Shown here piece after piece: positions 35,846 through 58,032 of a stretch of 64,000 nt of DNA. Positions within the stretch are counted from its first letter, which is position 1; every line of letters begins with the position of its first letter. The stretch spans positions 317,887 through 381,886 of IMG/VR virus record IMGVR_UViG_3300043399_000877. One strand, given 5' to 3'. Both the position numbers and the translations under genes were made by a program. The notes under the pieces are model-generated. The model was not told the origin of the DNA. It did no database searches and was given only the letters and a program-made list of their open reading frames with translations.

Positions 35846-36039
35846 CTCAGCATAAACAACGTGCGTTTGTGATCGTCAAATATTTTTATACCAGCACACT
35901 GGTAATCAATAAAAATCAGTTGGTAGTCGACATCTTTTTTGCCCATGTTTTGATCAATCCAAGACAGTAAGCCATGATAATAACCGGCCCGTCGCCGTTC
36001 AAACATTATAATGTCGTCTGTTATACTCTCAGATTTCAT
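35836..36039 (-). CDS. Small-family paralogue
   Basis: LSWIDQN...GIKIFDDHKRTLFMLRWG. Confidence 0.65.
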   Translation of the reverse strand: MKSESITDDIIMFERRRAGYYHGLLSWIDQNMGKKDVDYQLIFIDYQCAGIKIFDDHKRTLFMLRWG

Positions 36040-36445
36040 AATCCAAGTCGCCAGTGTCGCTCATGTTGTCACGACGGCCGCGCTGGCCGTCGTACTCTAG
36101 ATGGCGGATATAATTACGCAAATATCTTTCGATATTTTCACGGCCCACGGGATTCATGCTATGAACATAGAAATCAAAATCTGCAGGAATTTCGAGGTTC
36201 CCGTCCATATGCTGGTCCACAATCCACTGAGCAATATTGAAGCCAGTGGGCTCGTTGTTGCCGAGGTCGTGATCGAAAGAAATGAAGTTCGGAGCAATTA
36301 ATCCATGATTGATTATGGCTTGAATTGCTTGATCTCGATTGCGCACAACTGTCCACTGCTGCTCACGATAACGCTCTTGCATACGGCGAGGGGCCCAAGT
36401 AACGTCCTGCAAATTGCGCTCGTCATCAATAAAAAGATTCCACAT
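36029..36445 (-). CDS. Cyclic-phosphate-processing receiver-like domain protein
   Basis: LFIDDER, ISFDHDLG and VHSMNPVGRENI motifs. Confidence 0.8.
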   Translation of the reverse strand: MWNLFIDDERNLQDVTWAPRRMQERYREQQWTVVRNRDQAIQAIINHGLIAPNFISFDHDLGNNEPTGFNIAQWIVDQHMDGNLEIPADFDFYVHSMNPVGRENIERYLRNYIRHLEYDGQRGRRDNMSDTGDLDYEI

Positions 36446-36466
36446 GACTGTCTCCTAGTTTAGCTT

Positions 36467-36495
36467 AACCTAGCATGTCTAGCAACATATGTCAA
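36467..36495 (-). promoter_or_regulatory. Sigma70-type promoter driving the receiver gene and paralogue array
   Basis: TTGACA-N17-TAGGTT with TG extension. Confidence 0.65.
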
Positions 36496-36505
36496 TGCGG
36501 TTTTT

Positions 36506-36589
36506 TGGTGCCGCCGGGGAGACTCGAACTCCCACGACCGAAGTCACAAGCACCTCAAGCTTGCGTGGCTACCATTACACCACGGCGGC
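36506..36589 (-). tRNA. tRNA-Leu(GAG)
   Basis: Cloverleaf with long variable arm; loop TTGAGGT; encoded CCA. Confidence 0.9.
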
Positions 36590-36606
36590 AATTGTCCTTA
36601 ATATAA

Positions 36607-36774
36607 TCATTTAAGTTTTTGTATGGCATCTTCTATTTGTTTCAACGCAAAAGTAGTAAGGAGATACTCACTTCTTTTGTCACATTTGTCGCTTAAGAAA
36701 AGTTCTAAGTTACAAATAGCAGATTTAATATCACCCTCTATTGTACCTTTTGTGTTAATACAGAACAATCCCAT
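36607..36774 (-). CDS. Small hypothetical protein
   Basis: Start MGLFCI after SD GAGG; the longer ORF-track version overlaps a tRNA. Confidence 0.45.
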   Translation of the reverse strand: MGLFCINTKGTIEGDIKSAICNLELFLSDKCDKRSEYLLTTFALKQIEDAIQKLK

Positions 36775-36789
36775 GTAACTTCCTCTAAA

Positions 36790-36866
36790 TGGTACCCCCG
36801 GCAGGACTCTAACCCACAACCCTCGCGTTCGAAGCGCGATGCTCTATACAATTGAGCTACGGAGGC
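36790..36866 (-). tRNA. tRNA-Arg(TCG)
   Basis: Loop CTTCGAA; atypical T-loop TTAGAGT; CCA. Confidence 0.85.
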
Positions 36867-36871
36867 AAAAA

Positions 36872-37135: not shown

Positions 37136-37501
37136 TTACAGCAGTTTTAGATCCCCGGTTATGGGTTGCAGACGCTCGTGCGTGTCTGGGCCCACAGCAA
37201 TGCAGGTGTTGGTGGGCGTGCCGTTAAACACAGTCAAGCCTGCGTCCGTGACAAGCTCAGCGATGAGCCCTGCCGCACGGGCGCGATTGTATACGTCCAG
37301 CAACTCTTCCTCGCTGCTGACACCCACTGCAATCTTGGTAAACTTACCTTCTAGCCATTCTTTGACTCTCGGGTCAGCAAAGTTCACAAGAGTGGCTTTC
37401 ATGCTTGCATGTGCGCCCTGCGCGATCTCTTTACCACGCGGCATCTTGAGATCTTTTCTCATTACAATAATCTGTTTCATAGCAGTATCCTTAGTCGTCA
37501 A
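37136..37501 (-). CDS. Peptidyl-tRNA hydrolase, Pth2 type
   Basis: KQIIVMRKDL..GKEIAQGAHA, DAGLTVF and TCIAVGP motifs. Confidence 0.93.
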   Translation of the reverse strand: MTTKDTAMKQIIVMRKDLKMPRGKEIAQGAHASMKATLVNFADPRVKEWLEGKFTKIAVGVSSEEELLDVYNRARAAGLIAELVTDAGLTVFNGTPTNTCIAVGPDTHERLQPITGDLKLL

Positions 37502-38462
37502 CAGTTACTTCGGTCTTTGTCTTTTTGGTCTTGATCAGGGAGTAGATGACTCCGGCAGCCAAGATAGCAAAGGTTATAGCCAGTGATATCTCCGGTGGAA
37601 ATTTTGCCAAGCCAAGAAGATCGGCTATAAAGATTTTGCTTCCTATAAACACTAGAAGTATAGCCAGTGCTGTTTTTAGGTATTCAAATCTGTGCAGTAC
37701 CGCCGCAAGAGCAAAGTACAAGGCTCGCAATCCGAGTATTGCAAAAATATTGCTGGTATAGACAATGAACGGATCTGTTGTAATAGCAAAAACAGCAGGC
37801 ACACTATCGACTGCAAAAATCAAATCTGCAAGTTCAACAAGAACCAGTGCAAGGAACAGCGGAGTCACAAACCATTTGCCGGCATGTTTTACGAAGAAAC
37901 TGTTGCCGTGTAGTCGTTCGGTTACGTTGAATTTTGCCCTCATGAACTTTAGGGCAGGATTGTTTTCCAAGTCTGTTTCGGACTCTTTTACAAACAACAT
38001 CTTGACGCCGGTAAAGATCAAGAACGCAGCAAAAATGTAAAGTATCCAACCAAACTGGCTAACAAGCGTTGCACCCAGCCCAATCATAATACCACGAAGG
38101 ACGATAACGCCCAAAATACCCCAGAAAAGAACGCGGTGTTGATATTCTTTTGGAATAGAGAAGAAGCTGAAAATAAGAGCTATAACAAAGATGTTATCGA
38201 GCGCCAGTGTTTTCTCTACAACAAAAGCAGTTAGGTATTCAAATGACTGAACTGCACCGATCTGATACCAGACAAAACCGGAAAATGCCAGTCCTATTGC
38301 GATATAAACCGCTGAAAGTCTTAGACTTTCAGCAACACCGATTTCATGAGAATCTCGATGCAAAACACCTAGGTCAAAAACCAGCAGTGCAAGGACGATT
38401 GCCAAAAACAGCAACCACATCCACACCGGAGTGCCTAGAAAGAGAAGTGTTAAAAATTCCAA
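37491..38462 (-). CDS. TerC/Alx-family membrane protein
   Basis: EKTLALDNIFV, QHRVLFWGILG, DLIFAVDSVPA and TSNIFAILGLRALYF motifs. Confidence 0.95.
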   Translation of the reverse strand: MEFLTLLFLGTPVWMWLLFLAIVLALLVFDLGVLHRDSHEIGVAESLRLSAVYIAIGLAFSGFVWYQIGAVQSFEYLTAFVVEKTLALDNIFVIALIFSFFSIPKEYQHRVLFWGILGVIVLRGIMIGLGATLVSQFGWILYIFAAFLIFTGVKMLFVKESETDLENNPALKFMRAKFNVTERLHGNSFFVKHAGKWFVTPLFLALVLVELADLIFAVDSVPAVFAITTDPFIVYTSNIFAILGLRALYFALAAVLHRFEYLKTALAILLVFIGSKIFIADLLGLAKFPPEISLAITFAILAAGVIYSLIKTKKTKTEVTVDD

Positions 38463-39129: not shown

Positions 39130-39478
39130 CGTAAGGTTCTCCTCGAGTGCGCAACACTCTCCATGTGTATTCTTTTTCTACTCGTTCTGCGTAACGTTTG
39201 CGCATCCCATCCGGATCAGTCATCCAGTATTTCATACCTTCCGGGTGTCCATAGCTGTGCGCTGGCGCATTGAAATTGAGCCAACGAACAATATCCGGAA
39301 GTCGCTGGATGTTAATATGATCAGCACTGGTGATTGCCCCGTAAAGGTTGTTGCACAACACATTTGTCAAAAAACCTCCGGGCGGTAATCCGTAAACCAG
39401 ATAGTTATCTAGAGATTTTCTAGTGTGTTCCGGAATTTCTCGTCCATAGCTGTCACTATCAAAATCAATCATGCACAT
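39116..39478 (-). CDS. Conserved hypothetical phage protein
   Basis: YLVYGLPPGGFLTNVLCNNL..A..AD motif. Confidence 0.6.
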   Translation of the reverse strand: MCMIDFDSDSYGREIPEHTRKSLDNYLVYGLPPGGFLTNVLCNNLYGAITSADHINIQRLPDIVRWLNFNAPAHSYGHPEGMKYWMTDPDGMRKRYAERVEKEYTWRVLRTRGEPYDDLH

Positions 39479-39878
39479 TTGTTGTCCCATTCGGAAAAAA
39501 TACCATGGTTGGCTTGCCGGTTTTCTTCGCATAGTCGTGCGTATACCAAGTGCCGCCGTTGTTCTGCCACGAATTTTGATATGGCACAACTAACAGCACA
39601 TCACACTCATTGACTATCTGTCTATTTCTTGCGAAATAACTGAGTGGTTCTCGAAAATCGTCTGATCGGTGGTGCGCCCTAAGTTCTGTTTTAATCGGTG
39701 GATGACAGACCACCTTAATACCCATTTCCGCAGCCAATATAGCAACCTGTTCATCTACTCCCACACAGTCTCCGTGATGCAATTCTGTGATGCCGTTTCG
39801 ACTGGTTAGATAGTTTCTAACCAGTCGAAACTGTTCATCATTCATTCCGGAACGGGTACCAGTTACGCCAACTTTCAT
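39465..39878 (-). CDS. SLOG/DprA-like nucleotide-binding protein
   Basis: VGVTGTR, LHHGDCVGVD, ARNRQIV and GGTWYT motifs. Confidence 0.7.
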   Translation of the reverse strand: MKVGVTGTRSGMNDEQFRLVRNYLTSRNGITELHHGDCVGVDEQVAILAAEMGIKVVCHPPIKTELRAHHRSDDFREPLSYFARNRQIVNECDVLLVVPYQNSWQNNGGTWYTHDYAKKTGKPTMVFFPNGTTNVHD

Positions 39879-40393
39879 TATCTCTCGTTCCATTGTCCAA
39901 CAATGCTCATAGCATGTTTCATATGCTTGTAAAGCAATCCGTTTTCTGGATCAGTTCGTACTAGGCGTTTTTTGCCCAGCACTTCGTCAAATCGATAAGC
40001 GTTGTCATCAAACAAGATGAAGTCACGCACGTCAGTTCCGTAGTTAGCAAGGTACTCTTGAACCTCGTGTGCGCGGTCATTAAGACCTGCACGTTGCCAG
40101 ATAACGTTATCCGGATCAGTTTTCCACGGGCTTGCAAGTTTTCCACGGAAGCCGCTGTTGCCGAAGGCAGCAGAGACCCAGTGCAGCACCATATTGTCAT
40201 CGTTACGGAGATAATTTTTCCAGGTTGACATAAGAACAAACTCAACCGGGTAACGGTCGTGAAGTTTGTTCATGAAATCAACAGCAACCGGGTCAAAGCG
40301 ATGCCACATTTCATAAGTGGCGTTATGTGCATAATGCACACGGCTGCTGGTAAAGACGCCGTCGATGTCTAAAAAAACTAGATATCTGCTCAT
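39878..40393 (-). CDS. HAD-family phosphatase (RNA-repair associated)
   Basis: FLDIDGV, STW and ILFDD motifs. Confidence 0.8.
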   Translation of the reverse strand: MSRYLVFLDIDGVFTSSRVHYAHNATYEMWHRFDPVAVDFMNKLHDRYPVEFVLMSTWKNYLRNDDNMVLHWVSAAFGNSGFRGKLASPWKTDPDNVIWQRAGLNDRAHEVQEYLANYGTDVRDFILFDDNAYRFDEVLGKKRLVRTDPENGLLYKHMKHAMSIVGQWNER

Positions 40394-41274: not shown

Positions 41275-41507
41275 ATGTCATTTAGTAATTCATTTAGAAC
41301 TGCGTCAACCAGTTCTTCTACGAACTCATCTTCTTCACTTGCGAGTACAAAATCGTCTGCACTCATAGTACCAACCACCCATGCATCCCAGTGCCGTGTG
41401 CAAAACATTGCATCAGACAAAGATTCTCTAACGCGGTCTCGGAGTCGCCGTTTTAACGGCTCCGACACAGTTGCAATCAGGGCACGTCGGTCAAGTGCAG
41501 TGGTCAC
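41265..41507 (-). CDS. Hypothetical protein
   Basis: CTRHWDAWVVGTMSADDF motif. Confidence 0.6.
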   Translation of the reverse strand: MTTALDRRALIATVSEPLKRRLRDRVRESLSDAMFCTRHWDAWVVGTMSADDFVLASEEDEFVEELVDAVLNELLNDMPS

Positions 41508-41947
41508 AACACGTAAACCACTGGTTCAACGTCAGTCATTTCATCTTCGATGATCTGACTGATAATGTTCCAATTCCCGCCGCCGAGCCCAGCACCGATT
41601 TGCGGCATAGCAACCTGCGTTTCACCACTTTGACGAAGAACGCTGTTGATGGTGCGCATACAATCAGCCACTGCTTCGTAGTTCACAAAACGACTACCGT
41701 CTCGACCATACAAATGCTGAGTAATTGCGTTGATGATTACTTTGCCATTTGAAGGTACAAACTGTACATCACCCAGCTTGAGGCCATGCTCGTCGTACTG
41801 CTCAACATAAAACCGGTATGCGTCAAAGTGGTCGTCACGAACTATACGTGCAACACCTGAACCCATAACGCCCTGGGCATTGCAACCGTGTGCAATGTGC
41901 AGGATGTCGGTCTCGAAAAGATTGCCCTTGCGGTATTGGATTTTCAT
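41504..41947 (-). CDS. Macro domain protein (ADP-ribose processing)
   Basis: GNLF, IAHGCNAQGVMGSGVA and PQIGAGLGGGNW motifs. Confidence 0.92.
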   Translation of the reverse strand: MKIQYRKGNLFETDILHIAHGCNAQGVMGSGVARIVRDDHFDAYRFYVEQYDEHGLKLGDVQFVPSNGKVIINAITQHLYGRDGSRFVNYEAVADCMRTINSVLRQSGETQVAMPQIGAGLGGGNWNIISQIIEDEMTDVEPVVYVL

Positions 41948-42127: not shown

Positions 42128-42700
42128 TTAATCGTCTATTGCCAATGGATCTGTGATAACTGGAACCGATCCACGAAACATAAGATTTGATATTCCGAAA
42201 TCTAAATCATATTGCCCGTGTTGTTTTAATTTTTCCAATACTGCCATGATTTCTGGATAAGACCTTGATATATCAGCAACTACTCGTTGATACTGGTCAC
42301 GATCTCTTCCATCATTTGAGAGTATGTAATCGATCATATTGAACACATTACGATTATCTGTGCTGCGCGGATCAAAACTATCAAGCCGTTCCATTCTCAC
42401 TACGCGAAAGTTGTTGGGAAGTTTTATAATATTTCCACGAAGTTTTGGAACATGAGGGTTCCCGCGTAGCTGCATAATGTACTGTAAATACTGATCATAA
42501 CCGGCGTCGTTTTTATAAATTTTAACAACGTAATCGGCGCCCGGTTTAGCCAACACATGGGCATATAATCCGCTCCCCAAAGATTCAAACTCAAATCCAC
42601 GCTGCTGTAGTTGTTTGACGTAATCTTCTACGCCCAAGACCTCTTGGGCAGAAGCATACGCTGGGTTTTTTCTGTATCCGGTTAATTCACGTAATCGCAT
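42128..42700 (-). CDS. Protein-kinase-like fold protein
   Basis: LGSGLYAHV...VVKI, MERL and DLDFGISNLM...ITDP; start MRLREL after TATAAATA. Confidence 0.65.
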   Translation of the reverse strand: MRLRELTGYRKNPAYASAQEVLGVEDYVKQLQQRGFEFESLGSGLYAHVLAKPGADYVVKIYKNDAGYDQYLQYIMQLRGNPHVPKLRGNIIKLPNNFRVVRMERLDSFDPRSTDNRNVFNMIDYILSNDGRDRDQYQRVVADISRSYPEIMAVLEKLKQHGQYDLDFGISNLMFRGSVPVITDPLAIDD

Positions 42701-42714: not shown

Positions 42715-42792
42715 TGGTACTCCCGAGAGGATTCGAACCCCTGACCTTCGCGTTCGTAGCGCGACGCTCTAATTCCACTGAGCTACGGGAGT
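42715..42792 (-). tRNA. tRNA-Arg(ACG)
   Basis: Loop CTACGAA; CCA. Confidence 0.93.
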
Positions 42793-42793
42793 A

Positions 42794-43276
42794 TTAATTT
42801 ATCGATCGATTATCGGCAAATTGAATAGTTTTTCCAACATAGTTGGCTTCGGCACCGGTCATCATAGCGCGACCGGAGGATTCCAGATCCCAAACAAAAT
42901 CTGCCATAAATTCTTGAATGTCTCCGGTCACCTTTTTTAGTTTGTTGACCACCGCTGCGTTTATTGGTCTTACAGCTTCCAATTCTTGCTGGACTTCTGG
43001 TGGCAGGTTTCCCGTCACCGGTACCCATTGTGGTGGATTGGCGTTTCCGAGTTCTGAATGTATTTTGCCCATAACACCGGTTTGGGGGTCATACTCGGTA
43101 CCCTTGGTTGACTCATCTTCAACAGCATTTGCAAGCATCATGAATGTTCTTGCAACGTCCGGTGCAGCTTTAATCAACCAAACATCACCGTCTGCAAATT
43201 CATCTATATAACCTATGAGAACAGTATTTGCACTTTCATTAATACTGTCTAATTTATTCAGTAATGATCTAAACAC
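42794..43276 (-). CDS. Hypothetical late protein
   Basis: GTG start after SD AGGAG and a TAAATA box; N-terminus FRSLLNKLDSINES. Confidence 0.6.
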   Translation of the reverse strand: MFRSLLNKLDSINESANTVLIGYIDEFADGDVWLIKAAPDVARTFMMLANAVEDESTKGTEYDPQTGVMGKIHSELGNANPPQWVPVTGNLPPEVQQELEAVRPINAAVVNKLKKVTGDIQEFMADFVWDLESSGRAMMTGAEANYVGKTIQFADNRSIN

Positions 43277-43386: not shown

Positions 43387-43387
43387 A

Positions 43388-43465: not shown

Positions 43466-43469
43466 ATTA

Positions 43470-50933: not shown

Positions 50934-51379
50934 TAGAAGTCCGCCCCGCTCTGGTTGCAATCAAATACCCAAATTCCGGCATCACGCCACATACGAACAA
51001 CACGCGGGCGATCGTCAAAAACCATGTCCGGCTTTTGTCCATAGTCAGCGATGATTTGCTCTAGCATTTCACCTTTGACAATGTCGTCGGCGCGATAGTC
51101 ACCGTCCGCCCGCATGTAAATTTTCAAGTAGCCACGAAGGCGGTTGTTGGCCAGCCAGGTTTCAGTAGCTACACGGCTGGCTTCATTCCTGCCAGTGGCC
51201 AAAATAACAGCATGACCAGCATCAGTCATTTGACGGAACACTTCCGCAGTAGACTGGATTAAGGTATCATGCGGAATACCAGCGTCAAAAGCCGCCCAAT
51301 TTTTGGGCTTTGTGCGAACATAATGCAGCCGGTGCCGACAGTCTGCGAGAGTTCCGTCGATGTCAAAACAAATTAGCAT
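50933..51379 (-). CDS. HAD-family polynucleotide 3'-phosphatase (T4 PNK phosphatase-domain-like)
   Basis: FDIDGTLAD, TGR, MRADGDYRAD and FDDRPRV motifs. Confidence 0.88.
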   Translation of the reverse strand: MLICFDIDGTLADCRHRLHYVRTKPKNWAAFDAGIPHDTLIQSTAEVFRQMTDAGHAVILATGRNEASRVATETWLANNRLRGYLKIYMRADGDYRADDIVKGEMLEQIIADYGQKPDMVFDDRPRVVRMWRDAGIWVFDCNQSGADF

Positions 51380-51739: not shown

Positions 51740-52123
51740 CTATTTGTGCAAATCGTACTGGCGCATGTATTCCAGTTCGGCGTCCTCCCAGACAAAAGCC
51801 CACATGCAAGTTACTTCATTCGAAGTAAAAATTTTCCCATACCAGTTGCGCCACGGATACGTGGGATCAACAGTAAGATCACTGTGTTTGATTTGAGTGC
51901 GAATGTCGTGCATTTGATTCAGTGTAGTGCTGAGAACCAGCGTAACACCAAAATTCCGATCTTCGCACCAATTCACGTATGCAGCGCGGAATTCATCTTG
52001 ATTCATGAAATTTTTTGCATAAGCATCAAAGTCAGCCTGTGCATGTGCAGCCTGAGCCATGCCCTTGCCGGGATTCATGTCCTGCAGGTCTTCCCTCATG
52101 ATAATATACAGTCTCGGTTCCAT
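51740..52123 (-). CDS. Second Pth2-like peptidyl-tRNA hydrolase
   Basis: LYIIMREDL..MNPGKGMAQAAHA and DPTYP motifs. Confidence 0.75.
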   Translation of the reverse strand: MEPRLYIIMREDLQDMNPGKGMAQAAHAQADFDAYAKNFMNQDEFRAAYVNWCEDRNFGVTLVLSTTLNQMHDIRTQIKHSDLTVDPTYPWRNWYGKIFTSNEVTCMWAFVWEDAELEYMRQYDLHK

Positions 52124-52813: not shown

Positions 52814-53446
52814 TTAAATCTCCACATCAATGTAGTCAAGCTCAGCCAAGCACTGAAATACTGTTCCTTCAATCTTCTCACGGCTCGTGTAGTGCCAGTG
52901 ACCGAAGTACCACTGCTCAGGCTGATGCTGCTCAAACATATATTGCAGCATTTCTCCCGTGCGTGTCAAGTACAATTTTGGCTGGCCGCCCCAAACACGT
53001 TTGCCGGTACGGATGAACATGCGATAGGCAGTGAGTGTTGGGCAGTCATGAGTGATCATAACTCTCGGACGGACCGTTAGGTATGTATCAAGTACACGCT
53101 CAAATTCAGAAGAACTAAGTTGCTCAGTCTGCCACCAGTCGTATCCGGGAGTACGATAATCAGCATCGATACTCCAGGCACCGCCCACAAACATCACATC
53201 ATTCTCTACTGTACCGTCTGCTATCCAAGAAAGCATTTTAGGACACTGATTGGGATTATCGTGATTACCACGAATAAATCTGTGGCCAGTTCCACCAATA
53301 GTGTCGTTTACACGATCGTGCCAATAATCACCTTGTCCCATACCGACGCCGAAATCGCCCAGCTGAATACTACGATCGCAGTCGGCGATTACAGTTTGAT
53401 AGTCGTTCCAGAGACCGTGGACGTCTCCGATTATTCTTGTTAACAT
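52814..53446 (-). CDS. Calcineurin-like metallophosphoesterase
   Basis: GDVHG, LGDFG, RGNHD, THDCP and FGHWH motifs. Confidence 0.92.
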   Translation of the reverse strand: MLTRIIGDVHGLWNDYQTVIADCDRSIQLGDFGVGMGQGDYWHDRVNDTIGGTGHRFIRGNHDNPNQCPKMLSWIADGTVENDVMFVGGAWSIDADYRTPGYDWWQTEQLSSSEFERVLDTYLTVRPRVMITHDCPTLTAYRMFIRTGKRVWGGQPKLYLTRTGEMLQYMFEQHQPEQWYFGHWHYTSREKIEGTVFQCLAELDYIDVEI

Positions 53447-53843: not shown

Positions 53844-54086
53844 TTATGTGTTTGTTTGTTCTTTAAGTTTGCGGCAACATACCACTGGCATACCAACCAC
53901 TTCAAGTTTTTCGTGATCGTATATATAGCCCGGTTTGTCGAGAATAACTAGGGCAATTGTTTTTGCGTAATCACCCCAGCCGCCGATCCGGCCTTGCATC
54001 CCATCCATACTGCTGGCAGTATGACAAAATTCAATGCGATCTCCGACTTTTGCCAGTTCCCCACGATCTCTGTCATATTTAAACAT
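53844..54086 (-). CDS. Hypothetical SH3-like protein
   Basis: DRDRGELAKVGDRI. Confidence 0.5.
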   Translation of the reverse strand: MFKYDRDRGELAKVGDRIEFCHTASSMDGMQGRIGGWGDYAKTIALVILDKPGYIYDHEKLEVVGMPVVCCRKLKEQTNT

Positions 54087-55231
54087 TAGTTGCCTCCTTT
54101 GAGCAAAAACTCGTTGCTGATAGTTTTGAAGCTGAAGCTCGGGTCTTCGTTACACTTCCAGACAAGACCTTCGCGGACCTTGTGGTTGATGCTCGGACCT
54201 TCTGCAAGAACAAGACCTTCTTCGACACTGACGGGTGCTTTCCAGTTAGTACCATGCAGCGGAACATGTTCAAGACCGATCATGTGGCAGACGCTGCGGC
54301 GTTCACCTGGAGCGAGGTATGTGTGCTTTGCAATATCAAAGATGTCGAACACAAAGAATCGATGTTCTTTGAAGCCTTCACGGTTACCTTGAATGCCCGG
54401 CCCCATGATTTCGCCCTGAAAAGCAAGACCATCCGGAATCCTATCGCCGATCTTCAGGGCCATAGCTACAAAGGTGTTGTCTTTGTTCTCTTCGTTGATC
54501 TTCAGTTCAAGGTTCCGGCTGCAAACACGAAGTTCGCCTTCCCAACGGAAGATCGTGCAGCTTGAGCCATCGAGCTTCATGGTGACTTCGTAAGTCGGCT
54601 CTTTGAAGTCTTCTGGCACGACGACCGGATGCTCTTCAAGAGTCTGAGTCTCGGCGTTCCAGACCTTCTCCGTAGCGAACCGCTTGGCCCGCTTTTGGAT
54701 GTCGCCAAAGCAGTTCTGAATCCGCTCCTGATCGGTCTTGGGAATCAGCGAAGTCGGGAACGTGCCAGCAGCTTGACCTTGAAGCTGAGCAGGAATAGGT
54801 GCTTCCCACTTCTGGATGCCAAGAATTTCAGTAAGATCGGTATCTACTTCAAACAGTCTAACTGGTTCAAGATCACCAAACTGAACATAACCTCCGGGAA
54901 GGTATTGAATAAACTGTTGTGGAAGTTCACGAACAGTTTCGTCAATCTTGAGTAGAAGCCCCTGCGAAACTTGTCCACGAAGCTTAATAGTCCGCAGACG
55001 TTCACCCTTGACACCGTTGTATTCACGAGGTTCTTGACCTTTCGAGAGGAATGGAGCAAGTTCATGAGGAACCCATGAGTCAATTTCTAGGTAGAGAGCA
55101 AGATCACCAACCTTGAACTCATCTTTCTTGACGACGACTTTCCAGCCGTCAACAGTGGCAACCACGATGGCGTCGGCGCCTTCAATAGGTTGAATGTCGG
55201 CGATACGCCGAATAGTGGCAAGTTTACGCAT
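54086..55231 (-). CDS. RNA ligase, DRB0094 family
   Basis: MRKLATIRRI, LRGQVSQGL, PKTDQERIQN, KLDGSS, QGEIMG, EGLVWK and FKTIS motifs. Confidence 0.93.
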   Translation of the reverse strand: MRKLATIRRIADIQPIEGADAIVVATVDGWKVVVKKDEFKVGDLALYLEIDSWVPHELAPFLSKGQEPREYNGVKGERLRTIKLRGQVSQGLLLKIDETVRELPQQFIQYLPGGYVQFGDLEPVRLFEVDTDLTEILGIQKWEAPIPAQLQGQAAGTFPTSLIPKTDQERIQNCFGDIQKRAKRFATEKVWNAETQTLEEHPVVVPEDFKEPTYEVTMKLDGSSCTIFRWEGELRVCSRNLELKINEENKDNTFVAMALKIGDRIPDGLAFQGEIMGPGIQGNREGFKEHRFFVFDIFDIAKHTYLAPGERRSVCHMIGLEHVPLHGTNWKAPVSVEEGLVLAEGPSINHKVREGLVWKCNEDPSFSFKTISNEFLLKGGN

Positions 55232-55589
55232 ATTTGTTCCTTCCGATTCCGGCAATGTCGTTAAGCATTTTTTCCTGTTCAGCCCACTTGAGTTGTTGAT
55301 CTACACGAATCTTCAAATAGTCACGAATCAGTTCTCTGTTATTCCAAATCCACTGTTCATAGCGAGCCAGCTTCTTGCAGCACTCTTCGCATTCTTCTAC
55401 GAAAGTATGTCCTTCGACTTCAACATATCGAAACCAACGACTGCTTTCCCACTCTTCTTCATCGTAGTCTTCGGGTGGGTTCCAATCGATACCGCAGTCA
55501 CAGTGTAACCATGCACTGTACCCACCGCGGCCGGCATCCCACATCATATCGCTTGCAATCCCATCTCGGGGCATGGTATATTGTGTCAT
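55224..55589 (-). CDS. Hypothetical Zn-binding protein
   Basis: CDCG...CEEC. Confidence 0.55.
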   Translation of the reverse strand: MTQYTMPRDGIASDMMWDAGRGGYSAWLHCDCGIDWNPPEDYDEEEWESSRWFRYVEVEGHTFVEECEECCKKLARYEQWIWNNRELIRDYLKIRVDQQLKWAEQEKMLNDIAGIGRNKYA

Positions 55590-55609
55590 AGGCTTTCCTT
55601 GTTTAAGTT

Positions 55610-55638
55610 AACCTAGCAGATGCCGGCAGCGTTGTCAA
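55610..55638 (-). promoter_or_regulatory. Sigma70-type promoter
   Basis: TTGACA-N17-TAGGTT with TG extension. Confidence 0.65.
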
Positions 55639-55657
55639 CAGTTAGATCGTTACTGCA

Positions 55658-55885
55658 TTAAGTTTGTGGCCGTGCGACCCATTTTCCCGAAAGGATCGCA
55701 AATGGGCCAATGTACCAATGAGTAAAATGAACCAATTTGCTTTCGCTAAGTTCAGATACTTTTGAAAAGTATGGTTGAACTATTTCGTTATGCTTCCATG
55801 GAGTCAACGAGCGCCAATCATTTGATAGCAACAGTTTAATTATATGCTTTTTTGACTTGATTTCGTAGAGCTCGATGGCCATCAT
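55658..55885 (-). CDS. Hypothetical protein
   Basis: 75-aa ORF with SD. Confidence 0.45.
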   Translation of the reverse strand: MMAIELYEIKSKKHIIKLLLSNDWRSLTPWKHNEIVQPYFSKVSELSESKLVHFTHWYIGPFAILSGKWVARPQT

Positions 55886-55903
55886 TCCCTCGTTTAGTTT
55901 AGT

Positions 55904-56161
55904 TTAGTTCACTGGATACAGCACAACGCAACGAGGTTTGGCGAGTATTTCTGCCCATTCGTCCGGGCCCATATCCGCCTCGTCAGGTGTCCAATTCGTG
56001 CTGTATACACTGCCGTACCAAGTGGTTTCGGCAATGTATACACAGTTTTCATCAGCGCCCTCAAGCGGGCTGTACCCGTTGCCTTCGGCATCCTTTTGCA
56101 GGATTACTTCTGAGTCCGGGTCCATGGTTTGCAGTTGTTCAATAAGTTCAGATACTTTCAT
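55904..56161 (-). CDS. Conserved small phage protein
   Basis: MKVSELIEQL...QKDAEGNGYSPL motif. Confidence 0.65.
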   Translation of the reverse strand: MKVSELIEQLQTMDPDSEVILQKDAEGNGYSPLEGADENCVYIAETTWYGSVYSTNWTPDEADMGPDEWAEILAKPRCVVLYPVN

Positions 56162-57357
56162 TCCGTGATCTCCTGATTTTCAGATTCAATGCCCAGCCAT
56201 TGCGCACATTCCCGCCACTTGACGTTGGTGGTGATATGCTTGCGAATATGATCAAGAATCATTTCACGACCGTCACGGCCGCCAAAACGTCCGAATACAT
56301 ACTGCGGTGCAAAACTGTCGTTACCTTTGATAGTGGGCATCCACTCCTGCGCATAACGCTTGCGATCAAGACCGCTGGCTACCACAGTGTTCCAGTAACG
56401 CTCATAGCTTTCCACTGCCTTATGCAGTCGGTCACCAAACCGCTGAGCGAAGCTGTGAACACGATCGGCTTCATGCTGCGGCAGCATGGGCAGGACGTCG
56501 TCAATTTCTTCGTTCAGGATAAGGTCCACAATATGACGATCAAAGCGGATACGATCCACAGTCTTGTGAATGCGAACGTACCAATCGTTCTTGATCTTCA
56601 ACATATGCCCATCCGCAAAACGAATGATGTCACCTTCGCGTCCTTCTTGTTCGCGAGCGCGAGCAATGTAGTCGGTAAGGTTGCCTTCTACGCTGCCGTA
56701 TACCGGAACAATATTGAACGGAACATGACGATTGAACGGGACATACTCTCCGGTCAGATTGTCACGAATAGCAGTCAGGATCAGATCATCTTCTGCATAG
56801 TCGATAACAATCTGGTTCTTACGGCTGGTCCATTCAAAGATCGGAGTACGGTTGCCGGCCATCATAGCTTCGAGGAACATGAGTTTTTGGTCATAGTCCG
56901 GTTGTGCTACCAGCCAGGTTTCGGCGTTCATGGATACTTCGGTCACGCCCATTTTGGTGCCGAGGCGAATTTTGCCGCCAACATCAACCGGACGGATCAT
57001 GCTGCCGTCCAGCTTTTCCATAATCACATGCGGCTGACTCAGATCGATACGATTCATCTGAGTTTCTTCGCGTTCGTTCACGTTGAAGAACTTGTGGAAC
57101 GGACGGCTCATAATACGACCATCCGGATAGAAGATCAGTCCACGGCATTCACGACGCATGCGGTTGGTAAGCGATCGTTCGGCTCGCATCTTTGCACTTC
57201 CGCCTGCAACATTTACTGGAGGAAAAGTATCCTCCATGCTCACTGCATAGTTGATTACGGTACCGTAATCACGTTCGGCAATTACGAATTCTTCGCGACC
57301 TTCAATGTGAGGCAGCACGTCTTCAATGACGCGGATTTCAGGAAACTTGTAGTGCAT
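56158..57357 (-). CDS. RNA ligase, T4 Rnl1 family
   Basis: RECRGLIF, RPFHKFFN, EKLDGSM, EGDII and KIKNDWY motifs. Confidence 0.92.
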   Translation of the reverse strand: MHYKFPEIRVIEDVLPHIEGREEFVIAERDYGTVINYAVSMEDTFPPVNVAGGSAKMRAERSLTNRMRRECRGLIFYPDGRIMSRPFHKFFNVNEREETQMNRIDLSQPHVIMEKLDGSMIRPVDVGGKIRLGTKMGVTEVSMNAETWLVAQPDYDQKLMFLEAMMAGNRTPIFEWTSRKNQIVIDYAEDDLILTAIRDNLTGEYVPFNRHVPFNIVPVYGSVEGNLTDYIARAREQEGREGDIIRFADGHMLKIKNDWYVRIHKTVDRIRFDRHIVDLILNEEIDDVLPMLPQHEADRVHSFAQRFGDRLHKAVESYERYWNTVVASGLDRKRYAQEWMPTIKGNDSFAPQYVFGRFGGRDGREMILDHIRKHITTNVKWRECAQWLGIESENQEITE

Positions 57358-57520
57358 TTTGTGCCTCCGACTTTCTTTTACGGTTACGATAGATCAGTTT
57401 TTTAAAATCGTTTCTCTCTTGCATCCAGCGGTCACGCCGTCGCCGGAGCGAGTCCAGTTGGTACTGTGCTCGGCGAATCTGTTCGTCGAGCTCTGCTATA
57501 TCCTTTGCCGATCGCATCAC
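57338..57520 (-). CDS. Small coiled-coil protein
   Basis: 60-aa ORF downstream of a promoter-like sequence. Confidence 0.45.
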   Translation of the reverse strand: MMRSAKDIAELDEQIRRAQYQLDSLRRRRDRWMQERNDFKKLIYRNRKRKSEAQNALQVS

Positions 57521-57564
57521 GCATCCCTGTTGCTGTTAAGGTTACACTAAGGGATCGTGCAACA

Positions 57565-58032
57565 TTAGTCAACAGCTTTTTCATCAACATCAGCTAAACG
57601 TGCTTGAATCTCGAGATAAAACTGATGATACTTTGCAGTACGAGCGATGTCTCGTTCAGTCACGCCCTTGAGGCGACGAATGTCTGTGTTGTGCCGCAGG
57701 TCGCACAGCTTGACGCGCATGGCATCCTTGCTTGCAAAGACGCGTGTCTTATACTCGTCTAACGTCTCTCCCGGCAGTTTAGTAAGTGCTGCAATGCCCT
57801 CTAGGATACGTGCTGTCATGCCCGCCTCGCGCAGGTCTGCATAAGTAACGTCAGTGTCCTCAACAACGTCGTGGCCCAGCGCAATGCACTGCAATTCCTC
57901 GTCGTCGGTCTTGAGGTAATGCATGACCTTAAGCGGGTGCAAAATGTAGGGTTTCCCACCACGATCAAATTGACCGTGATGGGCATTGGTTGCAATGTGC
58001 AGCATACGACTTAATAGCTCGCCTCGTTTCAT
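57565..58032 (-). CDS. HD-domain hydrolase (RelA/SpoT hydrolase, Mesh1-like)
   Basis: AHHGQFDRGGKPYILHP, HDVVEDT and VKLCDLRHN motifs. Confidence 0.88.
   Translation of the reverse strand: MKRGELLSRMLHIATNAHHGQFDRGGKPYILHPLKVMHYLKTDDEELQCIALGHDVVEDTDVTYADLREAGMTARILEGIAALTKLPGETLDEYKTRVFASKDAMRVKLCDLRHNTDIRRLKGVTERDIARTAKYHQFYLEIQARLADVDEKAVD

What the first reader, a model, noticed from the sequence alone, without database searches (positions are those of the whole stretch)
36029..58032. Layered translation-rescue and RNA-repair arsenal surrounding the tRNA cluster
Seen: two unrelated RNA ligases (Rnl1 and DRB0094 types), a PNK-type HAD phosphatase, a second HAD, a metallophosphoesterase, a cyclic-phosphate receiver domain, two Pth2-type hydrolases, YqeY, a bL12-CTD-like protein and an HD alarmone hydrolase. 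Established: T4 Pnk/Rnl1 repair PrrC-cut tRNA. Inference: together with the attenuator this forms a sense, replace, repair and recycle system against translation-targeting immunity.
Basis: partly seen in the sequence, partly recalled or inferred. Interest (0 to 1): 0.6.

Follow-up and report, generated by a model that had tools for sequence, protein, structure and literature searches.

The report
Jumbo-phage tRNA-repair and counter-defence island
A 382-kb freshwater jumbo phage packs its tRNA genes together with enzymes that can mend cut tRNAs, free blocked tRNAs and destroy alarm nucleotides; the gene list is real, but this kind of island has already been described for jumbo phages.

Summary
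The two weakest were confirmed by structure: the second Pth2 by an AlphaFold model plus Foldseek, the bL12-CTD-like protein by its ESM Atlas model.

The segment is part of a roughly 49-kb accessory island. The island crosses the junction of a circularly assembled 381.6-kb phage genome and holds 39 of its 42 tRNA genes.

- The polynucleotide 5'-kinase needed for Rnl1-type repair lies outside the window (genome 6117-6638).
- A Zeta-toxin-like kinase sits on the plus strand (47199-47879).
- There is also a Macro domain, an ADP-ribosylglycohydrolase, and a 56-aa orphan TacA/DUF1778 fragment inside the tRNA array.
- The HD protein is closest to Aph1, a (p)ppApp-specific hydrolase.

In 80 related phage loci the repair genes stay linked while unrelated neighbours do not. 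Some relatives carry a tight Rnl1 / kinase / HAD / Rnl5 operon.

The replace, repair and recycle reading is therefore plausible. It matches the published account of jumbo phages (Iyer et al. 2021), so this is a new member of a known kind.

The "sense" layer is unproven. A promoter, 32-codon leader ORF and terminator precede the tRNA array and recur in five distinct phage sequences. A predicted antiterminator exists in the two sequences folded, but its function is untested.

The parts
36029..36445 (-). cREC (cyclic-phosphate-processing receiver-like) protein, 138 aa; the only copy in the genome
   Evidence: Pfam PF20274 at 2e-23. Single genome hit.
36506..36866 (-). tRNA-Leu(GAG) and tRNA-Arg(UCG)
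   Evidence: ARAGORN; Rfam.
37136..37501 (-). Canonical archaeal/eukaryotic-type peptidyl-tRNA hydrolase Pth2
   Evidence: Pfam PTH2 at 1e-30. TIGR00283 at 101 bits, above the 82-bit cut-off.
37491..38462 (-). TerC-family membrane protein. It has no evident link to RNA repair and is absent at this position in relative L087.
   Evidence: Pfam TerC at 2e-51. L087 gene table.
39465..39893 (-). SLOG/YpsA-like protein (weak call)
   Evidence: phrog_289 at 1e-10. Pfam YAcAr and cpYpsA are sub-threshold.
39878..40393 (-). Stand-alone 'Swiss-army-knife' HAD phosphatase with the DxDG motif intact
   Evidence: Pfam HAD_SAK_2 at 3e-18. Sequence.
41504..41947 (-). Macro domain protein; the only copy in the genome
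   Evidence: Pfam Macro at 3e-7. Single genome hit.
42128..42700 (-). T7 gp0.7-like protein-kinase family member (weak call)
   Evidence: phrog_15752 at 4e-10.
42715..45514 (-). Core tRNA array: Cys, Met, Glu, Tyr, Phe, Lys(UUU), Lys(CUU), Ile, Asn, Arg(CCU), His, Val, Arg(ACG), interspersed with small ORFs
43470..43661 (-). 63-aa bL12 C-terminal-domain-like protein
   Evidence: Pfam Ribosomal_L12 at 0.003, sub-threshold. Atlas model at pLDDT 0.93, TM 0.72 to bL12-family models.
44456..44626 (-). 56-aa orphan TacA/DUF1778-like protein. It matches only the C-terminal toxin-neutralising segment and has no RHH domain.
   Evidence: Pfam TacA1 at 1.3e-6, 28.7 bits (cut-off 21), profile positions 42-80 of 80. 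It aligns with the C-terminal parts of AtaR, KacA and TacA in the PDB. Two 56-aa homologues exist, one named DUF1778 by JGI and one with a precomputed PF08681 hit.
45709..45937 (-). Leader module: sigma-70-like promoter, 32-codon ORF (ATG at 45868, stop codon at 45770-45772) and an intrinsic terminator.
   Evidence: Sequence. Promoter scan. Fold z-score of -4.7. Alternative pairing on the nascent transcript. Recurs in 5 distinct phage sequences.
45515..45707 (-). Conserved structured spacer RNA between the terminator and the first tRNA, including a long hairpin with compensatory changes
46270..47166 (-).
   Evidence: Pfam PF03747 at 7e-77.
47199..47879 (+). Zeta-toxin/AAA_33-type P-loop kinase on the opposite strand. 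The divergent pairing with the ADP-ribosylglycohydrolase is conserved in L087.
   Evidence: Genome search. Pfam Zeta_toxin at 3e-15. PDB zeta toxin 1GVN, with the DGTGR motif aligned. L087 gene table.
49538..49999 (-). YqeY/GatB-tail-like protein; recurs near Rnl5 in 8 of 80 related loci
   Evidence: Pfam YqeY at 7e-9. Synteny.
50933..51379 (-). Stand-alone PNK-type HAD 3'-phosphatase with the DxDGT motif intact
   Evidence: Pfam HAD_PNKP at 2e-26. PDB Pnkp1 4XRP at 1.6e-10 and T4 Pnkp 1LTQ at 6e-6.
51740..52123 (-). Divergent Pth2 paralogue from a large jumbo-phage family. K20 and D86 are invariant in the 33-sequence alignment.
   Evidence: Pfam at 3e-6. 475 homologues. Alignment A1. AF2 model at pLDDT 90 with top Foldseek hits all Pth2.
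52814..53446 (-). Calcineurin-like metallophosphoesterase with all metal-binding motifs invariant
   Evidence: Pfam. Alignment A3. AF2 and Foldseek: Dbr1 at TMq 0.66, then Rv0805.
54086..55255 (-). Rnl5 (DraRnl/NgrRnl)-type RNA ligase: N-terminal OB domain plus nucleotidyltransferase, KLDGS motif
   Evidence: Pfam. PDB 5COT at 1e-66.
56158..57357 (-). T4 Rnl1-type RNA ligase including the C-terminal domain, KLDGS motif
   Evidence: Pfam. PDB 2C5U at 5e-26, aligned over residues 69-380.
57565..58032 (-). Small HD alarmone hydrolase of the Aph1 ((p)ppApp hydrolase) family
   Evidence: PDB 7SMG at 3e-25, against 5e-13 for Rel hydrolase domains. Pfam HD_4. Paper PMC10083569.
63153..64000 (-). C-terminal part of a NAMPT gene that continues across the contig junction. 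It lies outside the finding's range and shows that the island is continuous with the other tRNA block.
   Evidence: Pfam. 254-bp terminal repeat at 99.6% identity.

Best explanation
The segment is the larger half of a roughly 49-kb accessory island of an uncultivated freshwater jumbo phage. The phage has a 381.6-kb circular map, 41.9% GC and 42 tRNA genes. The island combines a near-complete tRNA set with stand-alone enzymes, several with their own promoter-like sites, that counter host attacks on translation.

**1. Replace.** Phage tRNAs substitute for cleaved or modified host tRNAs.

**2. Heal and seal.**
- 2',3'-cyclic or 3'-phosphate ends are cleared by the PNK-type HAD, the SAK-type HAD, the metallophosphoesterase and/or cREC.
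- 5'-OH ends are phosphorylated by a separate DxTN-type polynucleotide kinase, encoded about 12.5 kb away across the genome junction.
- Breaks are sealed by Rnl1 (anticodon-loop breaks) and by the Rnl5-type ligase (nicks in duplex RNA).

**3. Recycle.**
- Two Pth2 enzymes strip peptidyl or N-blocked aminoacyl groups from tRNAs.
- A YqeY (GatB-tail-like) protein may act as a tRNA-binding helper.
- A 56-aa TacA-like fragment may neutralise tRNA-acetylating GNAT toxins.

**4. Disarm signals and marks.**
- An Aph1-like HD hydrolase removes (p)ppApp-type alarmones, and possibly tRNA 3'-pyrophosphates.
- The Macro and ADP-ribosylglycohydrolase enzymes remove ADP-ribose marks or derivatives.
- NAMPT and an NMNAT-Nudix protein, just across the junction, restore NAD+.

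**Shown versus inferred.** Shown: the domain identities, the intact catalytic motifs, the genome organisation and the conserved linkage. Inferred: the substrates, the timing of expression and any protection against defence systems.
For: - Domain identities and motifs.
- The genome is circular, and the island continues into the second tRNA block. That stretch carries NAMPT, NMNAT-Nudix, the kinase and a second MPE.
- Conserved linkage in 80 Rnl5-anchored IMG/VR loci, counted within 10 kb of Rnl5: Rnl1 29, kinase 15, HAD_PNKP 12, MPE 11, YqeY 8, cREC 6, Macro 6, second Pth2 5, HD 4.
- In the same 80 loci the physically close but unrelated neighbours are rare: ClpB-like 1, o250 1, TerC 0.
- Six more distant loci carry a compact Rnl1 / kinase / HAD / Rnl5 operon.
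- The kinase family keeps the P-loop, an Asp after the P-loop, lid arginines and the DxTN motif invariant. It gives weak PSTK and PNK hits.
- All nine strongest sigma-70-like promoter matches in the region lie on the coding strand. Five lie in gaps upstream of genes: the HD gene, YqeY, Macro, the SAK-type HAD and the tRNA leader.
- Published framework: Iyer et al. 2021, sections 3.4.8-3.4.9.
- Phage tRNAs defeat PARIS and retron effectors (PMC11464382 and PMC11555353).
- Pth counteracts TacT (PMC4942678).
- Aph1 is (p)ppApp-specific (PMC10083569).
Against: - No activity, expression or protection data exist. The only possibly RNA-derived run gave contigs, not reads.
- The host and its defence systems are unknown.
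- The island also holds genes with no link to translation: TerC, a LemA-like/phrog_2087 membrane pair and many unknowns.
- The total number of promoter matches does not exceed the shuffled controls.
- The MPE fold match is generic, with Dbr1 and Rv0805 on top rather than the Pnkp phosphoesterase.
- tRNA genes lie within 10 kb of Rnl5 in only 10 of 80 related loci. The 10-kb flank is too short to judge this properly.
- RtcB, KptA and 2H enzymes are absent, and the CCA-adding enzyme lies elsewhere. The toolkit is therefore neither complete nor exclusive to the island.
Confidence: 0.62

Rival explanations
1. Housekeeping rather than counter-defence. The tRNAs adapt translation to phage codon usage. 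The ligases, kinase and phosphatases mature or maintain the phage's own unusual tRNAs, or serve another phage process. The Pth2 enzymes cope with peptidyl-tRNA drop-off under a heavy translation load.
For: - The array contains atypical tRNAs that may need special processing: tRNA-Lys(UUU) with a long variable arm, a tRNA-like gene with a D-loop insertion, and a further tRNA-like element.
- The genome carries a nearly full tRNA set rather than a few nuclease targets.
- Some public phage records annotate their Rnl1 homologue as 'RNA ligase and tail fiber protein attachment catalyst'.
Against: - Enzymes with no role in tRNA maturation sit in the same island: the Aph1-like hydrolase, Macro, ADP-ribosylglycohydrolase, the TacA-like fragment and the NAD+ salvage genes.
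- The healing enzymes act on 2',3'-cyclic-phosphate and 5'-OH ends, which are typical of toxin nucleases.
- The published comparative analysis favours a conflict role.
Confidence: 0.18
2. A translation-sensing attenuator in front of the tRNA array, with cREC as a receiver of cyclic-phosphate signals, senses the attack and switches on replacement, repair and recycling as one coordinated system.
For: - The promoter, 30-32-codon leader ORF, terminator and spacer precede tRNA arrays in five distinct phage sequences.
- On the nascent transcript, a GGAGG box at the 3' end of the ORF pairs with the 5' arm of the terminator, in both the window and L087. Masking a ribosome footprint at about codon 25 removes that pairing. 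I read the same box by eye in the other three sequences.
- The terminator stem shows a compensatory change between the window and L087.
- The leader is rich in the amino acids whose tRNAs follow it: 21 of 32 codons, p=0.006, tested post hoc.
Against: - Several repair genes, including the HD, YqeY, Macro and SAK-type HAD genes, have their own promoter-like sites and lie upstream of the leader or far from it. The leader could control at most the tRNA array.
- The leader peptide carries a conserved amino-acid motif (E-[KR]-x-[RH]-E-Y-[CR]-x-G). The L100 leader matches its own downstream array poorly. Both points argue against simple codon sampling.
- L087 has an extra promoter-like site after the terminator.
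- cREC is predicted to be an enzyme, not a sensor.
- Rfam finds no known regulatory RNA in the region.
Confidence: 0.12
3. An incidental pile-up of unrelated acquired genes in a permissive genome region, with no functional relation among them.
For: The island is mosaic. Relatives differ by insertions such as HNH genes and by loss of TerC. Many ORFs have no detectable family.
Against: Repair genes stay linked across relatives whose Rnl5 is 45-83% identical, while unrelated neighbours do not. Some relatives fuse four of them into one operon.
Confidence: 0.05

Closest known systems
Phage T4 Pnkp + Rnl1 repair of PrrC-cleaved tRNA-Lys
   Same: - An Rnl1 homologue with the nucleotidyltransferase lysine motif and the C-terminal domain.
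- A HAD phosphatase homologous to the T4 Pnkp phosphatase domain, with the DxDGT motif.
- A DxTN-type P-loop kinase.
- tRNA-Lys(UUU) is also supplied by the phage.
   Different: - The kinase and phosphatase are separate genes about 17 kb apart across the junction. In T4 they form one fused polypeptide.
- A second ligase of Rnl5 type, two further phosphoesterases and cREC accompany them.
- The host nuclease is unknown.
Jumbo-phage RNA-repair and nucleotide/NAD+ counter-defence repertoire (Iyer, Anantharaman, Krishnan, Burroughs, Aravind 2021, PMC7824862)
   Same: The paper lists tRNAs, ATP-dependent RNA ligases, polynucleotide kinase, PNK-HAD and SAK-HAD phosphatases, calcineurin-like phosphoesterases, cRec, Macro, the HD alarmone phosphodiesterase, PTH2, and NAMPT with NMNAT-Nudix. 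It interprets them exactly as here.
   Different: - The paper's text contains neither 'YqeY' nor 'ADP-ribosylglycohydrolase' (zero occurrences each).
- The section I read (3.4.9) says most ATP-grasp ligases are Rnl1 or Rnl2 and names no Rnl5 type. It does not mention a TacA-like fragment, a bL12-CTD-like protein or a leader-terminator in front of tRNA arrays. I did not search the whole paper for these last three.
Bacterial Pnkp1-Rnl-Hen1 / Pnkp-Hen1 RNA repair cassettes
   Same: The HAD's best solved relative is Capnocytophaga Pnkp1 (4XRP). The logic is the same: kinase, phosphatase and ligase.
   Different: The genes are separate. No Hen1 was found, but that search was uninformative because its control rang in no genome.
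Naegleria NgrRnl / Deinococcus DraRnl (Rnl5 family)
   Same: N-terminal OB-like domain followed by a nucleotidyltransferase domain, with 1e-66 to 5COT over both domains.
   Different: A roughly 30-40-residue insertion lies between the domains. The genomic partner is Rnl1.
Aph1 (p)ppApp hydrolase (7SMG) and small alarmone hydrolases
   Same: Single HD domain of about 150 aa, aligned end to end at 3e-25 with the HD and ED motifs kept.
   Different: It is not next to a (p)ppApp synthetase toxin. The substrate is untested: (p)ppApp, (p)ppGpp or pyrophosphorylated tRNA.
TacA/AtaR/KacA (DUF1778) antitoxins of GNAT tRNA-acetylating toxins; phage orphan antitoxins such as anti-DarTG1 (PMC11825919)
   Same: It matches the toxin-neutralising C-terminal segment of the family. 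Like other phage orphan antitoxins, it stands alone.
   Different: It lacks the N-terminal RHH DNA-binding half and has no adjacent toxin gene. Binding to any GNAT toxin is untested.

Membership tests
T4 Rnl1-type RNA ligase | Nucleotidyltransferase motif I lysine (KxDG) | tested here: met
   KLDGS in the window protein aligns with KEDGS of T4 Rnl1.
T4 Rnl1-type RNA ligase | Homology extends into the Rnl1-specific C-terminal domain | tested here: met
   Residues 69-380 align with residues 52-368 of 2C5U.
T4 Rnl1-type RNA ligase | Seals broken tRNA anticodon loops | not testable with these tools
   Needs a biochemical assay.
Rnl5 (DraRnl/NgrRnl) RNA ligase | N-terminal OB-like domain upstream of the nucleotidyltransferase domain | tested here: met
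   PF21189 over residues 12-102 and PF09414 over 221-377. Both domains align with 5COT.
Rnl5 (DraRnl/NgrRnl) RNA ligase | KxDG lysine and motif IV/V residues | tested here: met
   KLDGSS, EIMG and LVWK align with the corresponding NgrRnl residues.
T4 Pnkp (bifunctional kinase-phosphatase) | HAD phosphatase with the DxDxT nucleophile motif | tested here: met
   DIDGT at residues 7-11. HAD_PNKP at 2e-26. 1LTQ residues 162-294 aligned.
T4 Pnkp (bifunctional kinase-phosphatase) | Kinase domain fused N-terminally to the phosphatase | tested here: not met
   The HAD protein is 148 aa and stands alone. The kinase is a separate 173-aa gene at genome 6117-6638. The two are also separate genes in the operons of relatives.
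PNK/DxTN-clade polynucleotide kinase (the separate kinase) | P-loop, catalytic Asp after the P-loop, DxTN motif, lid arginines | tested here: met
   GKST, D37, DQTN and R125/R129 are invariant in 9 homologues. Reading the DxTN motif as the clade's hallmark rests on my own knowledge. Supporting hits are AAA_33 at 2e-15 and weak PSTK, KTI12 and PNK matches.
Pth2 peptidyl-tRNA hydrolase (second copy, 51740-52123) | Pth2 fold over the whole length | tested here: met
   AF2 model at pLDDT 90. The top 11 Foldseek hits are all Pth2 structures, TM 0.6-0.74.
Pth2 peptidyl-tRNA hydrolase (second copy, 51740-52123) | Conserved N-terminal GK..AQ..HA motif and the second-motif Asp | tested here: met
   K20, Q24, H27 and D86 are invariant in 33 homologues. 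hhalign to the canonical copy gives 91% probability over the N-terminal half. The second motif is altered: DPTYP in place of DAGxT.
Aph1-type (p)ppApp hydrolase | Single HD domain homologous to Aph1 end to end | tested here: met
   7SMG at 3e-25, residues 5-140 aligned with 6-139.
Aph1-type (p)ppApp hydrolase | Specificity for (p)ppApp over (p)ppGpp | not testable with these tools
   Needs an enzyme assay.
TacA/DUF1778 type II antitoxin | C-terminal toxin-neutralising segment | tested here: met
   PF08681 profile positions 42-80 of 80 at 28.7 bits (cut-off 21). It aligns with the C-terminal regions of AtaR, KacA and TacA.
TacA/DUF1778 type II antitoxin | N-terminal ribbon-helix-helix DNA-binding domain | tested here: not met
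   The protein is only 56 aa and starts at profile position 42. Its two homologues are also 56 aa.
TacA/DUF1778 type II antitoxin | Adjacent GNAT toxin gene | tested here: not met
   The neighbours are tRNA genes and small ORFs without a GNAT hit. The same holds in L087.
Leader-peptide transcription attenuator | Short translated leader followed by an intrinsic terminator upstream of the regulated genes | tested here: met
   The arrangement is present in five distinct sequences.
Leader-peptide transcription attenuator | Mutually exclusive antiterminator whose formation depends on ribosome position | tested here: inconclusive
   It is predicted in nascent-transcript folds of the window and L087. 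The pairing boxes are invariant, so there is no covariation, and there is no experiment.
Leader-peptide transcription attenuator | Regulatory codons matching the controlled function | tested here: inconclusive
   The window and L087 leaders are enriched (p=0.006 and 0.001, post hoc). L100 is not, and the peptide motif is conserved.

The most novel reading that the evidence does not exclude
In this jumbo-phage lineage the tRNA array may be gated by a conserved translation-coupled leader-terminator switch. When leader translation stalls because host tRNAs have been cut or blocked, transcription would read through into the phage tRNA genes. The array also hides a new kind of anti-defence gene: a 56-aa TacA-type antitoxin stripped to its toxin-binding tail. 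Together with the two Pth2 enzymes, it would neutralise host GNAT toxins that acetylate aminoacyl-tRNA.
Probability: 0.17. Interest if true: 0.72.

Novelty: new member of a known kind. Interest (0 to 1): 0.42.

Why it matters
tRNA-targeting immunity is now recognised as a major branch of bacterial defence. Examples include PrrC, RloC, PARIS, retron effectors, Schlafen-like nucleases, Cas12a3 and toxSAS enzymes.

This genome gathers nearly every predicted viral answer in one island, with intact catalytic motifs and many environmental relatives. It is therefore a convenient source of enzymes to test the predictions of Iyer et al. 2021 at the bench.

The specific new leads could extend the known repertoire if confirmed:
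- a split kinase and phosphatase;
- two ligases in one operon in relatives;
- YqeY as a recurrent partner of the repair genes;
- an orphan TacA tail;
- a conserved leader-terminator in front of tRNA arrays.

As it stands, the finding is a well-annotated instance of a published concept.

Tried and rejected
- **Close relatives.** Megablast of 12 kb against INPHARED phages found none.
- **Known regulatory RNAs.** Rfam, at gathering thresholds and at E<=0.1, found only tRNAs. No known attenuator, T-box or riboswitch is present.
- **Other repair enzymes.** RtcB, KptA and 2H phosphoesterase are absent from the genome. The Hen1 search was uninformative because its control rang in no genome.
- **The plus-strand kinase (47199-47879) as the missing polynucleotide kinase.** I considered this and set it aside. 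Its best match is Zeta toxin (DGTGR motif), and it is conserved next to the ADP-ribosylglycohydrolase. The DxTN kinase at genome 6117-6638 sits in the Rnl1 / kinase / HAD / Rnl5 operon of relatives.
- **PDB sequence searches** for that DxTN kinase and for the MPE gave nothing.
- **An ArfA-like ribosome-rescue role for the basic micro-ORF at 44346-44484.** There is no Pfam hit, no PDB hit and no BLASTP alignment to E. coli ArfA. Rejected.
- **Complex prediction of the TacA-like protein with a GNAT toxin.** Three guessed Swiss-Prot identifiers were not held, so the jobs were neither run nor counted. No verdict.
- **The leader as a sampler of the array's codons.** The enrichment is post hoc and fails in L100. 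Kept only as a weak possibility.
- **More leader homologues.** Exact-pattern searches for the leader coding core found nothing in viral or metagenome contigs. The terminator pattern found four loci.
- **Sequencing runs.** Only DNA-type runs hold the region, plus one guessed RNA run stored as contigs. No transcript ends or expression levels could be read.
- **Other limits.** No alternative genetic code was used. The big representative-protein search was not needed.

Full report
**What the window is**

The window is the last 64 kb of a single 381,886-bp virus contig with 41.9% GC. The first 254 bases of the contig repeat its last 254 at 99.6% identity. A NAMPT gene is split across the two ends: the N-terminal part lies at genome 858 to 1 and the C-terminal part at window 64000 to 63153. 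The map is therefore circular, about 381.6 kb.

ARAGORN finds 42 tRNA genes:
- 15 in the window (genome 354.4-363.4 kb);
- 24 just across the junction (8.9-21.1 kb), on the same strand;
- 3 elsewhere (75.4-75.7 kb).

The finding's segment is therefore the larger half of one continuous accessory island of about 49 kb that holds 39 of the 42 tRNA genes. Near-identical DNA occurs in freshwater metagenomes. Diverged relatives occur in estuary, aquaculture and wastewater metagenomes. No close relative is among the cultured phages in INPHARED.

**Checking the observation**

*Ligases.* The two ligases are unrelated types.
- 56158-57357 is Rnl1. It matches T4 Rnl1 (2C5U) at 5e-26 through the C-terminal domain, with its KLDGS motif aligned to KEDGS.
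- 54086-55255 is the DraRnl/NgrRnl (Rnl5) type. It matches 5COT at 1e-66 over the N-terminal OB domain and the nucleotidyltransferase domain.

*Phosphoesterases and cREC.*
- The PNK-type HAD (50933-51379) has the DxDGT motif and matches Pnkp1 and the T4 Pnkp phosphatase domain.
- The second HAD (39878-40393) is the Swiss-army-knife type.
- cREC (36029-36445) scores 2e-23.
- The metallophosphoesterase (52814-53446) is weak by Pfam. Its GDxHG, GD, GNHD, H and GHxH motifs are nevertheless invariant in 11 homologues. Its model (pLDDT 83) is an MPE fold, nearest to the RNA-debranching enzyme Dbr1 and the cyclic-nucleotide phosphodiesterase Rv0805.

*Pth2, YqeY and the bL12-like protein.*
- The first Pth2 (37136-37501) is canonical.
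- The second Pth2 (51740-52123) matched only half of the Pfam profile. It belongs to a family of at least 475 proteins, many on contigs of 270-374 kb. K20, Q24, H27 and D86 are invariant. It folds at pLDDT 90, and all top Foldseek hits are Pth2 structures over the full length.
- YqeY passes the Pfam cut-off.
- The bL12-CTD-like protein (43470-43661) is sub-threshold by sequence. Its Atlas model superposes on bL12-family models.

*HD protein.* The HD protein (57565-58032) is much closer to the (p)ppApp-specific hydrolase Aph1 (7SMG, 3e-25) than to Rel hydrolase domains (5e-13) or Mesh1 (PMC10083569).

*The kinase.* Rnl1-type repair needs a 5'-kinase, and none lies in the stated range. A genome-wide AAA_33 search found two kinases.
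- One is a plus-strand gene at 47199-47879. Its best match is Zeta toxin, with the DGTGR motif aligned. It sits divergently next to an ADP-ribosylglycohydrolase (46270-47166), and this pairing is kept in relative L087. It probably acts on a small molecule of the NAD/ADP-ribose type rather than on RNA ends. That is inference.
- The other is a 173-aa gene at genome 6117-6638, next to a second metallophosphoesterase. Its family keeps the P-loop, an Asp after the P-loop, lid arginines and a DxTN motif invariant. I recognise DxTN from prior knowledge as the hallmark of the PNK/PSTK/KTI12 clade. NCBIfam gives weak PSTK and PNK hits.

*Other genes in the segment.*
- A Macro domain (41504-41947).
- A SLOG-like protein.
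- A T7 gp0.7-like kinase family member (42128-42700).
- A 56-aa protein (44456-44626) inside the tRNA array.

The 56-aa protein matches only the C-terminal, toxin-neutralising part of TacA/DUF1778 antitoxins: profile positions 42-80 of 80, at 28.7 bits against a cut-off of 21. It aligns with that part of AtaR, KacA and TacA. Two 56-aa homologues exist, one named DUF1778 by JGI and one with a precomputed PF08681 hit. One of them sits at the same place in the syntenic contig L087.

*Across the junction.* There lie NAMPT, an NMNAT-Nudix protein, an S-adenosylmethionine decarboxylase, QueF and methyltransferases.

**Is the clustering meaningful?**

The genome's only PTH2 genes, its only PF09414 ligase, its only cREC and its only Macro gene all fall in these 22 kb. 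Comparison with relatives is more telling. I anchored on the Rnl5-type ligase and fetched 80 IMG/VR loci with 10-kb flanks. Their Rnl5 is 45-83% identical to the window's.

| Gene | Loci with it within 10 kb of Rnl5 (of 80) |
|---|---|
| Rnl1 | 29 |
| DxTN kinase | 15 |
| PNK-HAD | 12 |
| Metallophosphoesterase | 11 |
| YqeY | 8 |
| cREC | 6 |
| Macro | 6 |
| Second Pth2 | 5 |
| HD hydrolase | 4 |
| ClpB-like ATPase (close in the window, unrelated) | 1 |
| 250-aa membrane protein o250 (close in the window, unrelated) | 1 |
| TerC (unrelated) | 0 |

Closer relatives keep the order Rnl1, Rnl5, (HD), MPE, second Pth2, YqeY. Six more distant loci have a compact Rnl1 / kinase / HAD / Rnl5 operon in which the kinase and the HAD are separate genes. 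This is good evidence that the ligases, the kinase and the HAD work together, and that the kinase at genome 6117-6638 is the cognate one.

Adjacency to tRNA genes is less clearly conserved. Only 10 of the 80 loci have a tRNA within the flank. In the window the nearest tRNA is already 8.6 kb from the ligase, so the flank is too short to judge.

**How it most likely works**

The parts fit the healing-and-sealing chemistry established for T4 Pnkp/Rnl1 against PrrC.
- Phosphoesterases open and remove 2',3'-cyclic or 3'-phosphates.
- The kinase phosphorylates the 5'-OH.
- Rnl1 seals anticodon loops.
- The Rnl5-type ligase, whose solved relatives seal nicks with a 3'-OH RNA strand in duplexes, would handle breaks in stems.
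- Pth2 enzymes would release tRNAs trapped as peptidyl or N-blocked aminoacyl esters. Bacterial Pth is known to detoxify TacT-acetylated tRNA (PMC4942678).
- The TacA-like tail could bind the toxin itself, by analogy with other orphan antitoxins of phages (PMC11825919).
- The Aph1-like hydrolase would remove (p)ppApp made by toxic synthetases, and possibly pyrophosphate on tRNA 3' ends.
- The phage tRNAs replace depleted host species, as shown for T5 against PARIS and retron effectors (PMC11464382, PMC11555353).

All nine strongest sigma-70-like promoter matches lie on the coding strand. Five sit in gaps just upstream of genes: the HD gene, YqeY, Macro, the SAK-type HAD and the tRNA leader. 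This suggests independent, probably early, expression. The total number of matches is not above the shuffled controls, so this stays an inference.

All steps concerning substrates and protection are inferred. None is shown.

**The "attenuator"**

Upstream of tRNA-Cys, on the minus strand, the elements run in this order:
1. a TTGACA-17-TATGTT promoter match (45937-45909);
2. a 32-codon ORF (45868-45770);
3. a strong intrinsic terminator (about 45748-45709; the region's fold z-score is -4.7);
4. a structured spacer of about 190 nt;
5. the tRNA array.

The same arrangement precedes tRNA arrays in L087, L097, L098/L099 and L100. That makes five distinct sequences including the window. Shared features are:
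- a conserved peptide motif, E-[KR]-x-[RH]-E-Y-[CR]-x-G;
- a GGAGG box near the 3' end of the ORF;
- a nearly invariant terminator, with one compensatory change between the window and L087;
- a pre-tRNA hairpin whose outer stem is fully compensated between the window and L098.

RNAalifold finds 16 of 33 spacer pairs with a change on both sides that keeps the pair, on only five sequences.

Folding the nascent transcript before the terminator's 3' arm exists pairs the GGAGG box with the terminator's 5' arm, in both the window and L087. A ribosome mask at about codon 25 removes that helix, while masks at codons 5-20 leave it. This is the logic of a leader-peptide attenuator: a stall gives read-through.

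Several points keep it unproven:
- the pairing boxes are invariant, so there is no covariation;
- the conserved peptide suggests a function of its own;
- the enrichment of the leader in the array's amino acids is post hoc and fails in L100;
- L087 has an extra promoter-like site after the terminator.

At most the element could control the tRNA array, not the repair genes.

**Comparison with what is known, and novelty**

Iyer et al. 2021 (PMC7824862, sections 3.4.8-3.4.9) already describe the same set in jumbo phages, with the same interpretation. Their list covers tRNAs, Rnl1/Rnl2-family ligases, polynucleotide kinase, PNK-HAD and Swiss-army-knife HAD, calcineurin-like phosphoesterases, cRec, Macro, the HD alarmone phosphodiesterase, PTH2 and NAD+ salvage. 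The finding is therefore a new member of a known kind.

The following were not found in what I checked of that paper:
- 'YqeY' and 'ADP-ribosylglycohydrolase' have zero occurrences in its text.
- Section 3.4.9 names only Rnl1 and Rnl2 families and rare divergent versions, not an Rnl5 type.
- That section does not mention the TacA tail, the bL12-like protein or the leader-terminator. I did not search the whole paper for these.

These are leads, not established novelties.

**Verdict**

Interest is moderate.

Noticed in passing
window 45709-45937 (-); also L087:2205-2400, L097:~8850-9130, L099:~5600-5850, L100:~5150-5400: A promoter, a 30-32-codon leader ORF (motif E-[KR]-x-[RH]-E-Y-[CR]-x-G, with a GGAGG box near its end) and a nearly invariant terminator precede tRNA arrays in five distinct jumbo-phage sequences. 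A competing antiterminator pairing is predicted in the two sequences folded.
   Followed up: partly
window 45515-45707 (-): A conserved structured spacer of about 190 nt lies between the terminator and the first tRNA. It has a GGGCGG...GATGAAA motif and a long hairpin whose outer stem is fully compensated in L098. It has no Rfam match and its function is unknown; it could be a processing signal or a new RNA.
   Followed up: partly
window 44259-44345 (-): tRNA-Lys(UUU) is 87 nt long and has a stem-loop variable arm, like a class II tRNA. This is unusual for tRNA-Lys, which is a common target of anticodon nucleases. L097 also carries an 87-nt tRNA-Lys(UUU).
   Followed up: no
window 41087-41190 (-) and 43833-44016 (-): Two tRNA-like elements are missed by ARAGORN and Rfam. 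The first looks like tRNA-Thr(GGU) with an insertion of about 26 nt in the D-loop. The second has a T-arm inside a long hairpin and shows the highest contig depth (302) in the one run guessed to be RNA.
   Followed up: no
window 44346-44484 (-) ; L087:4143-4331: A conserved, very basic micro-ORF (71% identical to its L087 counterpart over 48 aa) reads straight into the tRNA-Lys(UUU) gene in the window. In L087 it has its own stop codon. tRNA processing would leave a message without a stop codon. The ArfA similarity I suspected was not found.
   Followed up: partly
window 46270-47166 (-) and 47199-47879 (+): The ADP-ribosylglycohydrolase and a Zeta-toxin-like kinase form a divergent gene pair that is conserved in L087. 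They may be a functional pair acting on NAD/ADP-ribose derivatives.
   Followed up: partly
window 63153-64000 plus genome 1-858; genome 2055-3080: NAMPT spans the contig junction, which carries a 254-bp terminal repeat. An NMNAT-like cytidylyltransferase-Nudix fusion follows it. Together they look like a phage NAD+ reconstitution pathway.
   Followed up: partly
genome 17688-17762, 11837-11910, 19599-19674 (outside the window): ARAGORN reports a tRNA with a CUA anticodon (amber-suppressor type, labelled Pyl) and two tRNAs with irregular anticodon loops in the other tRNA block.
   Followed up: no
window 42128-42700 (-): This protein matches the PHROG family of the T7 gp0.7 protein kinase (4e-10). 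That kinase was recently reported to disarm defences by phosphorylation (PMC13645617).
   Followed up: no
window 50042-50359 (-): A 105-aa protein of a phage-only family with no known domain recurs within 10 kb of the Rnl5 ligase in 7 of 80 related loci, sometimes as several paralogues.
   Followed up: partly
window 47867-49535 (-): A LemA-like protein (phrog_1383, annotated as a virion structural protein) and a phrog_2087 protein with hydrophobic, apparently membrane-spanning segments at both ends sit in the middle of the island. They stay together in L022.
   Followed up: no
L087:2949-3677 and 10878-11627: HNH-type homing endonuclease genes are inserted in the relative's tRNA array and next to its Pth2 gene, where the window has other genes. 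This shows that the island is mosaic.
   Followed up: no
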